Assembly: GCF_001194135.2 (NCBI RefSeq)
Contig: NC_068990.1
Location: forward strand, 5,966,004-6,030,003
Source of the DNA: Octopus bimaculoides
Taxonomy: Eukaryota
Direction of reading: 5' to 3'
Length of the DNA stretch: 64,000 nucleotides
Part shown: positions 21,961-23,910 of the stretch, piece after piece
How positions within the stretch are numbered: the stretch's first letter is position 1
Layout of the letters: the number at the start of each line of letters is the position of its first letter
Position numbers and translations under genes: made by a program
Notes under the pieces: generated by a model
Databases searched by the model: none
Told to the model about the DNA's origin: nothing
The model's input: only the letters and a program-made list of their open reading frames with translations

Positions 21961-22430
21961 TCTTTTCTGCTTTGTTGGTTACTAGTCGTCGTCGTTAACA
22001 TGATCTTTATCATTAACCTCCACATTGTTAGAATCATCATCATCACCATCATTATCGTCGTTATTATTACCGTCCTCGTCATGATCATAGTTCCTTATCT
22101 TTCTTTTCTATACACCGCTTTGACTTCTGCTGTAGTACAAATTTTCATACAAATGTCACGATATTATATTTCCGTCAATTCAATAACGCACTTTCTGACT
22201 CGGGTCCTCGTTTAAATAATTTATTAATAAATTTTAAATAATGATGTTCTCAAACCGCTAAATTAGCTGCAAAAATTTATTAACTGCAGAGTTATTTCCG
22301 GACTTAGCGCGCCAGATTGAAGACATTTGAAGAGATACACTGAATGTAATATGTAGAACTCTACACGTGCTCCCTTTCGGGTAGACGTCTTGTGTCTAGT
22401 TCTGGAAATTATATTTTATAAATCGACAGA

Positions 22431-22495
22431 CTACGCTGATGATCCTGCAGATATTTACTTATGTAAATTTTAACAGGTGAAACTATAGTACATAG
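22431..22495 (+). ncRNA. type-I hammerhead ribozyme, copy 1
   Basis: CUACG-CUGAUGA-U CCUG..[AUUUAC uuau GUAAAU]..CAGG U-GAAAC UAUA GUA-CAUAG. Canonical core, extended helix II, palindromic helix III ACUAUAGU, GUA triplet; helix I has one C.A mismatch. Confidence 0.75.
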
Positions 22496-22948
22496 CTTAA
22501 TGAGTTTTTTTTTAGTATTTTGTCATTTGTCTTGCCCTTTTACAGTCTGTTGTGTCGCTAAATTTTTACTGAGAACATATTTTTTCGTGGTTGGATGAAT
22601 CGGCATCTATTTCTAGCATATAGGAGTCCACTTTTGCTTGTCACTCCTCTTATTTTTGTATGTAATATAATTTTAATCTTCGGATTTTTTTAATATGCTA
22701 GACCACTGGTTTTAATTGATTAATATCAATTTCTGCCCTCATTAATAAATTTTAAATAATGATGTTCTCAAACCGGTAAATTAGCTGCAAAAATTTATTA
22801 ACTGCAGAGTTATTTCCGAACTTAGGGCGCCAGATTGAAGACATTTGAAGGGATACACTGAATGTAATTTGTAGAACTCTACACATGCTCCCTTTCGGGT
22901 GGACGTCTTGTGTCTAGTTCTGGAAATTATATTTTATAAATCGACAGA

Positions 22949-23013
22949 CTACGCTGATGATCCTCAAGATATTTACTTATGTAAATTTTAACAGGTGAAA
23001 CCATGGTACGTAG
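22949..23013 (+). ncRNA. type-I hammerhead ribozyme, copy 2
   Basis: CUACG-CUGAUGA-U CCU..AGG U-GAAAC CAUG GUA-CGUAG. Perfect 5-bp helix I, palindromic helix III ACCAUGGU, predicted cleavage after 23008. Confidence 0.8.
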
Positions 23014-23910
23014 GTTAATCGTTTTTTGTTTTTTTGTATTCTTTCATTTGTCTTGCCCTTTTACAGTCTGTTGTGTCGCTAAGTTTTTACTGAGATCATA
23101 TTTTTTCGTGGTTAGATGATTCGGCATCTATTTCTAGCATATAGGAGTCCACTTTTGCTGGTCATTCCTCTTATTTTTGTATGTAATATATATATATATA
23201 AGTATATACATATATATATAAGTATATACATATATATATATTCATGTATGCATATATGTGTGTGTGTATGTGTGCATATGTATATCACTGTGTGTGTTTG
23301 TGTGTGTGTGTGTGCGTGCACGCGCTCCGTATGTATGTAGTAATTTTCTTTGCAAAGAAATACATAATGAATTTCGTCAACTTCATTGAAAGAAATTTTG
23401 AACCGATATTATGTTATAAACTATATTTCCTAAATCTTATTGTTATATTTCTTTATAAGAAGGAGAATAATTTGTGCACGAATATTATAAGACGTAGAAA
23501 TATGATGCCATCATCATAATCGTCATCATCATCAACATCATCATCATTATTCTTGCCGTCGTCTTCGTCGTCTTAGACAGTATCATCATCATAACTCATC
23601 AAATACCTGAATAAGAATAGGGCATAAAAGATACGTGCCTTGAATAATGATGGTGAAGAAGAGGAGAAAGCGGTGAAAGAGAGGGAGAATGAGAGACGTG
23701 GAGAATAAAAATGATGCTAATAATTGCAATGATGACGATGAAGGCCGTGGTGCTAACGAATATGGTGATGACACTGATGATGATGATGATGATGATGATG
23801 ATGACGACGAAGTTGATAAAATAAGTACCATTTGAATACTAGGATCACTGTAATTGACTCAGCTCATCTCCCGAAATTGCTGGCCGTGTGCCAAAATTTG
23901 AAGCTATTTA

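What the first reader, a model, noticed from the sequence alone, without database searches (positions are those of the whole stretch)
22223..23189. Tandem hammerhead-ribozyme repeat predicting a 518-nt self-excising (retrozyme-like) RNA
Seen: two head-to-tail units with a 518-bp period, each carrying a complete type-I hammerhead core at the same position (22431-22495 and 22949-23013), and no ORF. Established: tandem type-I hammerheads in metazoans mark Penelope pseudo-LTRs and non-autonomous retrozymes, whose transcripts self-cleave into monomers that can circularise; palindromic helix III allows dimeric folding. Inference: read-through would release 22491-23008 (518 nt) as a monomer or circRNA. 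I do not recognise this family, so it may be undescribed in this lineage.
Basis: partly seen in the sequence, partly recalled or inferred. Interest (0 to 1): 0.85.

Follow-up and report, generated by a model that had tools for sequence, protein, structure and literature searches.

The report
Hammerhead-ribozyme tandem repeat (animal retrozyme type)
A non-coding 518-bp sequence repeated head to tail carries a self-cleaving hammerhead RNA motif in each copy, which fits the known animal "retrozyme" class of mobile elements that make small circular RNAs; it is a probable new member of that class rather than a new kind of thing.

Summary
Unit 1 (22223-22740, 518 bp) and unit 2 (22741-23190, 450 bp, cut off by an (AT)n microsatellite) are 94% identical. 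There is no ORF over 44 aa. Each unit has CUGAUGA...GAAA...GUA|C in type-I hammerhead order on the + strand.

Caveats:
- Positions 10.1/11.1 are U.U, not G-C.
- Copy 1 has a C.A mismatch in helix I, and copy 2 loses one helix II pair.
- No Rfam hammerhead model matches, even at E<=10.

Evidence that it is real:
- The experimentally cleaving axolotl retrozyme ribozyme (Ax353/HHR_Amex2) has the same U.U plus AC-NNNN-GU-A layout.
- A covariance model built from four published cleaving retrozyme hammerheads finds copy 2 (E=0.04) and copy 1 (E=1.2), in the proposed register.
- Helix III is an 8-nt palindrome in both copies, kept through a double substitution (ACUAUAGU / ACCAUGGU).
- The 518-nt + strand RNA folds unusually well (z=-3.9), and differences between the units spare that fold on the + strand only.
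- The motif was absent from 30 Mb of random sequence.

Copy number, expression and cleavage could not be tested, and the organism was not identified.

Verdict: a retrozyme-type element, and a new member of a known kind. Activity of this particular copy is uncertain. Interest is moderate to low.

The parts
22223..22740 (+). Repeat unit 1, complete (518 bp, GC 32%, no ORF)
   Evidence: the repeat finder D2/D5, blastn and nhmmer self-hits, alignment, composition, ORF list
22741..23190 (+). Repeat unit 2, 3'-truncated (450 bp), 94.4% identical to unit 1; lacks the last 68 bp of the unit
22431..22495 (+). Hammerhead copy 1, type I. Helix I is CUACG/CAUAG with one C.A mismatch. Core CUGAUGA is 22436-22442. 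Helix II is 22443-22478: U.U, CCUG/CAGG, an internal loop, then the AUUUAC-UUAU-GUAAAU hairpin. GAAA is 22479-22482. Helix III is the palindrome ACUAUAGU at 22482-22489. The predicted cut is after A22490.
   Evidence: sequence; own descriptor hit; model R1 hit 22430-22489, 10.6 bits, E=1.2; homodimer minimum-energy structure has the 8-bp helix III; no Rfam match
22949..23013 (+). Hammerhead copy 2. Helix I is CUACG/CGUAG, 5 perfect bp. Core is 22954-22960. Helix II base is weakened (CCUC/CAGG, 3 bp plus U.U). GAAA is 22997-23000. Helix III is the palindrome ACCAUGGU at 23000-23007. The predicted cut is after A23008.
   Evidence: sequence; model R1 hit 22951-23011, 15.6 bits, E=0.04; homodimer minimum-energy structure has helix III and helix I; no Rfam match
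22491..23008 (+). Predicted 518-nt monomer between the two cut sites. The + strand RNA has MFE -127.9 kcal/mol linear and -122 circular, with 63% of bases paired. In that fold the 5' and 3' ends pair and the hammerhead core is sequestered.
   Evidence: strand folding z=-3.88, 0 of 100 shuffles as stable, against z=-2.68 for the - strand; circular folds; differences between units spare the + strand fold
22863..22937 (+). Long near-perfect hairpin just upstream of hammerhead copy 2 (equivalent in unit 1: 22345-22419). It is rich in G-U pairs, so it is more stable as + strand RNA. All three differences between the units inside it keep pairing or lie in unpaired positions.
   Evidence: weak reverse-strand nhmmer self-hits at 22343-22415 and 22860-22933
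23186..23241 (.). (AT)n / 20-bp-period microsatellite at which unit 2 breaks off; the 3' boundary of the array
   Evidence: TRF, junction sequences. Penelope-like elements are reported to insert preferentially into microsatellites such as (TA)n (PMC8557442). That link is an inference here.

Best explanation
The locus is a genomic copy of a non-autonomous, non-LTR ('animal-type') retrozyme: one full unit plus one 3'-truncated unit. This is a non-coding, AT-rich tandem repeat whose + strand transcript carries one type-I hammerhead ribozyme per unit.

Proposed mechanism:
1. Transcription runs through both units. The promoter is unknown. The many T-runs argue against Pol III.
2. Each hammerhead has only a 2-bp helix III capped by a palindromic tetraloop. 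It becomes fully active when two ribozymes pair through the 8-nt palindrome into a dimeric hammerhead.
3. Each cuts after GUA (22490|22491 and 23008|23009), leaving 5'-OH and 2',3'-cyclic phosphate ends.
4. The 518-nt linear monomer is sealed by an RtcB-type tRNA ligase into a circle.
5. The circle refolds into a stable, branched, largely double-stranded form that hides the ribozyme core.
6. A reverse transcriptase supplied in trans, most likely from a Penelope-like element, copies circles or multimers and inserts tandem cDNA, often into microsatellites.

Shown here: the sequence anatomy, the dimer and monomer folds in silico, and strand-specific conservation of structure between the units. 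Inferred from the published family: cleavage, ligation, circularity and mobility. This particular copy is probably a weak substrate, because each ribozyme has one stem defect and the two palindromes differ.
For: - Tandem units with a hammerhead at the same position and no ORF.
- The architecture equals the 'canonical metazoan type-I' description: helix I ~6 bp, helix II 4 bp, helix III 1-2 bp plus a 2-4 nt palindromic loop, acting as dimers (PMC4209133).
- The one unusual feature, U.U at the base of helix II, is present in axolotl HHR_Amex2. The Ax353 construct reads CUGAUGA-U-GCC..GGC-U-GAAAC-ACGU-GUA|U (suppl. Table 2). It cleaves 22% per hour as a monomer and efficiently as a dimer (PMC7229834).
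- Model R1, built only from four published cleaving retrozyme hammerheads, places copy 2 third (15.6 bits, E=0.04) and copy 1 sixth (10.6 bits, E=1.2) in the whole window, in the proposed register.
- The helix III palindrome is kept through a double change, U->C with A->G. That is roughly p=0.03, given 5.6% divergence.
- Homodimers form the 8-bp helix III in their minimum-energy structures: -28.0 and -29.2 kcal/mol, against -20.4 and -19.2 for two monomers.
- The monomer RNA has z=-3.88, matching the 'highly self-paired' circRNAs described for retrozymes.
- On the + strand circular fold, the 25 differences between units give 2 compensatory pairs (null 0.2, P=0.014) and 6 broken pairs (null 10.6, P=0.023). 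The - strand shows no signal (P=0.57).
- Chance rate: 18 relaxed hits in 30 Mb of random sequence, and 0 with a palindromic helix III.
- GC is 32%. A unit length of 518 bp lies within the 51-972 bp reported for retrozyme families, most of which have <=7 units (10.64898/2026.07.22.740005).
- The same window holds two further type-I hammerhead-like motifs, so this genome carries hammerhead-bearing repeats.
Against: - No Rfam hammerhead model matches, even on 83-96-nt slices at E<=10.
- 10.1/11.1 is not G-C. Copy 1's helix I and copy 2's helix II are each weakened.
- As monomers, the hammerhead fold (-3.3 and -6.1 kcal/mol) is less stable than the MFE (-10.2 and -9.6), and the local z-scores are unremarkable.
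- The copy 1 + copy 2 heterodimer does not form helix III.
- Only one locus exists in 64 kb. No relative was found in any reachable collection, so family size and covariation across copies are unknown.
- No Penelope RT or GIY-YIG remnant is recognisable in the window.
- No target-site duplication is visible.
- The model E-values are rough and marginal.
Confidence: 0.62

Rival explanations
1. Dead relic. The repeat descends from a hammerhead-bearing retrozyme, but this copy (and possibly the whole family) no longer cleaves. It is a decaying insertion with no present RNA product.
For: - The units differ by 5.6%, with as many transversions as transitions, so this is not a recent insertion.
- There is one stem defect per ribozyme, and the two palindromes are mismatched.
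- Unit 2 is truncated.
- There is no Rfam match.
- Another motif in the window, at 63931-63972, is clearly a hammerhead with a mutated core. This shows that such relics exist here.
Against: - All 11 core bases and the GUA triplet are intact in both copies.
- The substitutions spare the + strand RNA structure more than chance would.
- The palindrome was kept through a double change.
- U.U at 10.1/11.1 is compatible with cleavage in axolotl.
Confidence: 0.2
2. Fragment of an autonomous Penelope-like element. The 518-bp unit would be a duplicated pseudo-LTR, or a partial tandem of one, and not a separate non-autonomous family.
For: - Penelope-like elements carry hammerheads in their pseudo-LTRs, form partial tandems, and prefer microsatellite targets (PMC4209133, PMC8557442).
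- Retrozymes are reported to be phylogenetically close to these pseudo-LTRs.
- The array ends in (AT)n.
Against: - No RT or GIY-YIG coding remnant lies next to the array or anywhere in the window.
- The only nearby retroelement ORF fragment (31.1-31.7 kb) is 8 kb away on the other strand.
- Metazoan Penelope hammerheads are usually 'minimal' and lack a helix III stem-loop. This one has the canonical 2-bp stem plus tetraloop.
Confidence: 0.08
3. Coincidence. This is an ordinary local tandem duplication or a low-copy satellite that happens to contain a hammerhead-like string. No ribozyme was ever present.
For: - The relaxed descriptor gives ~0.06-0.07 chance hits per window. A whole genome would therefore hold thousands of them.
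- My descriptor also hit an unconvincing site at 179..83(-).
- Rfam is silent.
- The two copies are not independent observations.
Against: - Zero hits with a palindromic helix III in 30 Mb of random sequence.
- The motif also sits in a tandem repeat, on the strand whose RNA is the more structured one, and shows compensatory changes.
- A model trained on unrelated published ribozymes finds it.
- It matches Ax353 base for base around the core.
Confidence: 0.08

Closest known systems
Metazoan non-LTR retrozymes (Cervera & de la Pena 2020, PMC7229834); closest single example is axolotl Rtz_353 with HHR_Amex2
   Same: - Head-to-tail, ORF-less, low-GC repeats with one type-I hammerhead per unit.
- Helix III of 2 bp plus a palindromic tetraloop.
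- A U.U mismatch at the base of helix II.
- A GUA cleavage triplet.
- A predicted highly self-paired monomer RNA.
- Dimer-dependent folding.
   Different: - The unit is 518 bp, against 330-350 bp in axolotl and ~170-400 nt for the circRNAs described.
- Helix II carries a 26-nt inner arm with its own 6-bp hairpin, instead of a 5-6-nt loop.
- Helix I is 5 bp and starts with G-C rather than A-U.
- There is no sequence similarity outside the core.
- Only 1.87 units are present here.
- Copy number, expression and cleavage are unknown.
Invertebrate retrozyme hammerheads (coral Amil224, mussel Mg353)
   Same: Type-I topology, a palindromic helix III (ACAGUACUGU, ACGCGCGU), 4-bp helix II, and an AT-rich repeat context (mussel).
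   Different: Those have G-C at 10.1/11.1, short loop 2, a GUC triplet and 6-bp helix I, and they cleave efficiently as monomers. Units are 220-390 bp, in thousands of copies.
Penelope-like element pseudo-LTR hammerheads (Cervera & de la Pena 2014, PMC4209133)
   Same: A type-I hammerhead that works as a dimer, palindromic 15.2-16.2 positions and loop 3, an extra or unpaired base after A9, a longer helix II, and association with microsatellite targets.
   Different: Those flank an RT/GIY-YIG ORF, and none is present here. Most are 'minimal', with no helix III stem-loop, and they conserve G10.1-C11.1.
Newt/salamander satellite 2 and Schistosoma Sm-alpha hammerhead repeats
   Same: Transcribed tandem or dispersed repeats with type-I hammerheads. 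The newt ribozyme also needs dimers. This is from the literature as summarised.
   Different: Different sequence, canonical 10.1/11.1, and conserved loop 1-loop 2 contacts that cannot be recognised here.
Plant LTR retrozymes
   Same: The concept is the same: a non-autonomous retroelement whose hammerheads excise a circularisable RNA.
   Different: The plant elements have type-III hammerheads inside ~350-bp LTRs, a PBS, a PPT and 4-bp TSDs. None of these is present here.

Membership tests
Hammerhead ribozyme, type I | Conserved core C3-U-G-A-N-G-A9 ... G12-A-A14 ... N-U-H17 in the order helix I 5' strand, core, helix II hairpin, GAAA, helix III hairpin, cut site, helix I 3' strand | tested here: met
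   Both copies have CUGAUGA, GAAA and GUA|C in this order on the + strand.
Hammerhead ribozyme, type I | Three base-paired helices closing the core | tested here: inconclusive
   Copy 1: helix I has 4 of 5 pairs (C.A mismatch), helix II 4 bp, helix III 2 bp. Copy 2: helix I 5 of 5, helix II 3 bp, helix III 2 bp. The hammerhead fold is not the monomer MFE. The homodimer MFE does contain helices II and III, and helix I for copy 2.
Hammerhead ribozyme, type I | G10.1-C11.1 pair at the base of helix II (near-universal) | tested here: not met
   It is U.U in both copies. Precedent: axolotl HHR_Amex2 / Ax353 has the same U.U and does cleave.
Hammerhead ribozyme, type I | Match to the curated Rfam covariance models (Hammerhead_1 and relatives) at gathering score | tested here: not met
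   No hammerhead hit at gathering score. None at E<=10 on 1.4 kb, 96 nt or 83 nt. Likely reasons are the 26-nt insertion in helix II, the U.U, and the short helices I and III. This could not be tested on edited sequences.
Hammerhead ribozyme, type I | Match to a model of experimentally validated retrozyme hammerheads | tested here: inconclusive
   Model R1 (4 published sequences) scores copy 2 at 15.6 bits (E=0.04) and copy 1 at 10.6 bits (E=1.2), window-wide with filters off. The register is correct, but the scores are marginal and the calibration is rough.
Hammerhead ribozyme, type I | Site-specific self-cleavage | not testable with these tools
   This needs in vitro transcription.
Metazoan non-LTR retrozyme | Head-to-tail repeats of a few hundred bp with a type-I hammerhead in at least two consecutive units | tested here: met
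   Two units and two hammerheads, 518 bp apart. Both hammerhead MFEs (-10.2 and -9.6 kcal/mol) pass the < -5 kcal/mol criterion of 10.64898/2026.07.22.740005. TRF, the first step of that paper's pipeline, does not report this 1.87-copy array.
Metazoan non-LTR retrozyme | Non-coding; no LTR, PBS or PPT; GC below 50% | tested here: met
   The longest ORF is 44 aa. GC is 32-34%. There are no terminal repeats other than the tandem units themselves.
Metazoan non-LTR retrozyme | Monomer RNA predicted to be stable and highly self-paired | tested here: met
   z=-3.88, with 63% of bases paired. Structure is conserved between the units on the + strand only.
Metazoan non-LTR retrozyme | Multi-copy family in the genome (tens to >10^5 copies) | not testable with these tools
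   There is only one locus in the window. No eukaryotic genome collection can be searched by DNA. Indirect attempts found nothing.
Metazoan non-LTR retrozyme | Expressed as linear and circular RNA of unit length | not testable with these tools
   No transcriptome data were available.
Metazoan non-LTR retrozyme | Co-occurrence with autonomous Penelope-like elements in the same genome | tested here: inconclusive
   No RT or GIY-YIG of Penelope type appears in the 64 kb. Two further solo type-I hammerhead-like motifs and an unclassified retroelement N-terminal fragment are present. 64 kb is too little sequence to decide.
Penelope-like element pseudo-LTR | The repeat flanks an ORF encoding RT plus GIY-YIG endonuclease | tested here: not met
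   There is no such ORF next to the array or anywhere in the window.
Plant LTR retrozyme | Type-III hammerheads in LTRs, plus PBS, PPT and a 4-bp TSD | tested here: not met
   The topology is type I, with helix I open. There are no LTRs and no recognisable TSD.

The most novel reading that the evidence does not exclude
This could be the founding copy seen so far of an undescribed retrozyme family. Its features would be an unusually long unit (518 nt) and a hammerhead whose helix II is extended into a 36-nt two-part arm on top of a U.U base, in an SSR-rich invertebrate-like genome for which no retrozymes have been catalogued.

Such a family is invisible both to the Rfam models and to TRF-first retrozyme pipelines. 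That would imply current censuses undercount retrozymes with long units, long helix II arms or fewer than 2 copies per locus.
Probability: 0.4. Interest if true: 0.45.

Novelty: new member of a known kind. Interest (0 to 1): 0.35.

Why it matters
If confirmed, it adds one more family, possibly one more lineage, to the retrozyme/circRNA system. It would be a natural hammerhead that combines the U.U helix II base so far documented in axolotl with a long, structured helix II arm.

Its practical value is methodological. The locus escapes both standard detectors: Rfam covariance models, and TRF followed by a motif search. It is found by a small model trained on validated retrozyme ribozymes. Genome surveys may therefore be missing similar elements.

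It does not open a new question. The biology of cleavage, RtcB ligation, circRNA formation and Penelope-dependent spread is already established for the class.

Tried and rejected
- Rfam was run on the whole window at gathering score, and at E<=10 on 1.4 kb, 96 nt and 83 nt. There was no hammerhead hit, only microsatellite-driven false miRNA matches at 23183-23362.
- I looked for more copies in the window with blastn (word size 7) and nhmmer --max. There are none.
- I looked for relatives elsewhere in three ways, all without result:
  - All six-frame ORF pieces of the repeat were joined into one query against the 5.8-billion-protein set, hoping for spurious gene calls on related contigs. Nothing scored E<=1.
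  - A pattern scan of JGI metagenomes with CTGATGATCCT-N20-34-CAGGTGAAAC gave 10 hits. All were chance matches inside bacterial coding sequence with no hammerhead context.
  - Exact look-ups of window ORFs found nothing on record.
- Identifying the organism failed. LINE-like ORF fragments matched only 40-46%-identical RTs on unnamed ENA assembly contigs.
- A literature search for hammerheads or retrozymes in cephalopods or shrimps gave only general Penelope papers.
- For a target-site duplication, or nesting inside another repeat, the only flank similarity is (CAT)n microsatellite.
- TRF cannot see the array.
- The bacterial promoter/terminator scan was not used, because this is a eukaryotic scaffold.
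- The descriptor hit at 179..83(-) was rejected as chance: it has a long irregular helix II and a 2-bp helix III with large loops.
- I considered that the U after A9 is the 'extra nucleotide between 9 and 10.1' typical of Penelope hammerheads. I rejected this as the sole explanation, because a matching extra U precedes G12. That makes it a symmetric U.U, as in HHR_Amex2.
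Full report
**What is there**

The window is a draft eukaryotic scaffold. It has eight N gaps, GC of 36%, and 6% of its bases in microsatellites.

At 22223-23190 there are two head-to-tail units. Unit 1 is complete (22223-22740, 518 bp). Unit 2 (22741-23190) stops after 450 bp, where an (AT)n tract begins. The units differ at 25 of 447 aligned positions (94.4% identity; 12 transitions, 13 transversions) and by two small indels. 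GC is 32-34%. The longest ORF is 44 aa.

No further copy exists in the 64 kb. TRF does not report the array, because it has only 1.87 copies.

**The hammerhead motif**

On the + strand each unit reads, for copy 1: CUACG-CUGAUGA-U-CCUG-(26 nt containing an AUUUAC/UUAU/GUAAAU hairpin)-CAGG-U-GAAA-C-UAUA-G-U-A|C-AUAG. This is the order expected for a type-I hammerhead.

There are three departures from the textbook motif:
- Positions 10.1/11.1 are U.U rather than G-C.
- Copy 1 has a C.A mismatch in helix I, and copy 2 has CCUC instead of CCUG in helix II.
- Helix II is 36 nt long.

No Rfam hammerhead model matches at any threshold I could apply.

**Is it chance?**

I wrote a descriptor requiring CUGANGA, helix II of at least 4 bp with one mismatch allowed at its base, GAAA, helix III of at least 2 bp, UH, and helix I with at least 4 of 5 pairs. 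It hits copy 1 and one unconvincing site at 179..83(-).

The same descriptor gives 0.057 hits per dinucleotide-shuffled window. In first-order Markov sequence of the window's composition it gives 18 hits in 30 Mb, which is 0.074 per window. None of those has the 8-nt self-complementary helix III seen here. A relaxed motif alone would therefore occur by chance thousands of times in a large genome. The combination seen here should not: a palindromic helix III, placement in a tandem repeat, and the features described below.

**Comparison with validated ribozymes**

Cervera & de la Pena describe the canonical metazoan type-I hammerhead as having helix I of ~6 bp, helix II of 4 bp, and helix III of 1-2 bp capped by a 2-4-nt palindromic loop. 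It is active as a dimer when two copies are near each other (PMC4209133). Their 2020 paper shows that such ribozymes sit in ORF-less, low-GC tandem repeats, the non-LTR retrozymes. [quoted passage not shown]

That paper also describes axolotl HHR_Amex2 (~60,000 copies). [quoted passage not shown] It cleaves 22% in 1 h as a monomer and far better as a dimer. The Ax353 construct in the paper's supplementary Table 2 reads CUGAUGA-U-GCC-CACUA-GGC-U-GAAAC-ACGU-GUA|U. That is the same core-proximal layout as this locus, CUGAUGA-U-CCUG...CAGG-U-GAAAC-UAUA-GUA|C.

I aligned the four cleaving ribozymes from that table (coral, mussel and two axolotl) and built covariance model R1. I then searched the whole window with filters off. 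Copy 2 ranked third (15.6 bits, E=0.04) and copy 1 ranked sixth (10.6 bits, E=1.2). Both were aligned in the proposed register, with the 24-nt helix II arm treated as an insertion. This is an independent detection, but a marginal one.

**Evidence from the two copies themselves**

- Palindrome. The helix III segment is ACUAUAGU in unit 1 and ACCAUGGU in unit 2. These are two substitutions at mirror positions that keep an 8-nt palindrome. The probability is about 0.03, given 5.6% divergence.
- Dimers. RNAcofold puts the 8-bp intermolecular helix III into the minimum-energy structure of each homodimer: -28.0 and -29.2 kcal/mol, against -20.4 and -19.2 for two separate monomers. It does not do so for the copy 1 + copy 2 heterodimer.
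- Monomer RNA. The 518-nt + strand RNA has MFE -127.9 kcal/mol and z=-3.88, with 0 of 100 shuffles as stable. The - strand gives -103.1 kcal/mol and z=-2.68.
- Circular fold. In the circular fold (-122 kcal/mol, 63% of bases paired) the ends pair, and the GAAAC-palindrome segment is sequestered.
- Substitutions against the fold. I mapped the 25 differences between units onto that fold.
  - + strand: 2 compensatory pairs (null 0.2, P=0.014), 5 one-sided changes that keep pairing, and 6 broken pairs (null 10.6, P=0.023).
  - - strand: no signal (P=0.57).

With only two sequences this is suggestive rather than conclusive. It does point to selection on a + strand RNA.

**Interpretation**

The locus fits the operational and structural definition of an animal non-LTR retrozyme:
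- The unit length lies inside the 51-972 bp reported range.
- Three quarters of described families have at most seven units.
- Both hammerhead MFEs pass the -5 kcal/mol criterion used for 'active' calls (10.64898/2026.07.22.740005).

The array ends in a (TA)n tract. Penelope-like elements, the presumed mobilisers, prefer such microsatellite targets (PMC8557442). That link is an inference.

Cleavage, circularisation and mobility are inferred from the family and are not shown here. This genomic copy is probably a poor substrate, because each ribozyme has one stem defect and the two palindromes pair badly with each other. The main rival is therefore that this is a decaying, inactive copy of such an element.

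Two other readings are less likely. A Penelope pseudo-LTR fragment is unlikely because no RT/GIY-YIG remnant lies nearby and the ribozyme has a canonical rather than 'minimal' helix III. Pure coincidence is unlikely for the reasons given above.

**What could not be done**

No collection of eukaryotic genomes can be searched by DNA with these tools. Indirect routes all failed: the six-frame ORF query, the metagenome pattern scan and the exact-ORF look-ups.

The organism was not identified. LINE fragments match only 40-46%-identical RTs on unnamed ENA contigs.

As a result, copy number, covariation across the family, expression, and the claim that the family is undescribed in this lineage all remain open.

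**Verdict**

This is most likely a new member of a well-described class. It has two mildly unusual traits, a 518-nt unit and a long helix II arm on a U.U base. It also carries a practical lesson: both Rfam and TRF-first pipelines miss it.

Noticed in passing
window 5150-5192 (- strand): A solo type-I hammerhead candidate with an intact core: UUCAGG-CUGAUGA-C-GAG-CAAAGA-CUC-A-GAAAC-AU-GUC|CCUGAA. It has a perfect 6-bp helix I, a palindromic ACAUGU helix III, and a C.A apposition at the base of helix II. Model R1 scores it at 20.9 bits, E=1.1e-3, better than the reported finding. It lies ~230 bp from the assembly gap at 4705-4922, so a tandem context cannot be excluded. Its flanks are unrelated to the 518-bp unit.
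   Followed up: partly
window 63931-63972 (+ strand): The best hit of model R1 (25.5 bits, E=4.8e-5): UCUGCA-UUGACAA-GGGG-CAACA-CCCU-GAAAC-UA-GUC|UGCAGA. All three helices are intact, but the core is mutated (C3->U, G8->A), so this is a dead hammerhead relic. It lies 28 bp from the end of the window, so its context is cut off.
   Followed up: partly
window 31100-31800 (- strand): Frameshifted ORF fragments resembling the N-terminal region of a retroelement protein (...LSHEELELPSLGPKFILS... and ...LTKAQHKTLTKLKK...). No RT or endonuclease domain follows. The type (Penelope-like or LINE) was not determined.
   Followed up: partly
window 3087-3555 (-), 31990-32250 (-), 56085-56707 (+): C-terminal fragments of LINE-type reverse-transcriptase ORFs (...NRPDIMIWDRKEK......IPIIVGALG...). 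They match RVT_1 / zf-RVT proteins at 40-46% identity on large unnamed ENA assembly contigs.
   Followed up: partly
window 23806-24317; also 1567-1652, 37521-37609, 59177-59260, 13516-13539: A short dispersed repeat, probably a SINE-like element, containing ...GGTCGAT(A/G)(A/T)AATAAGTACCAGTTGA.CACTG(A/G)GGT.... It occurs at least five times in the window. Two or three tandem copies lie just downstream of the finding. A second dispersed repeat is present at 12389-12551, 28450-28610 and 63002-63250.
   Followed up: no
window 23183-23362: The (AT)n/(TG)n microsatellite block next to the array gives sub-threshold Rfam 'miRNA' matches (mir-3149, mir-297 and others; 16-37 bits against gathering scores of 49-101). 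These are low-complexity artefacts.
   Followed up: yes
window 22506-22514, 23023-23037 and elsewhere in the unit: Runs of 6-9 T lie 15 nt downstream of each predicted cut site, and several more occur within the unit. These would terminate Pol III, so if the repeat is transcribed through, Pol II is the more likely polymerase. An AATAAA lies at the start of each unit (22226, 22744).
   Followed up: no
window 83-179 (- strand): My relaxed hammerhead descriptor also hit CUGAUGA...GAAA here, but with an irregular 53-nt helix II and a 2-bp helix III around large loops. Model R1 does not report it. I judge it a chance match.
   Followed up: yes
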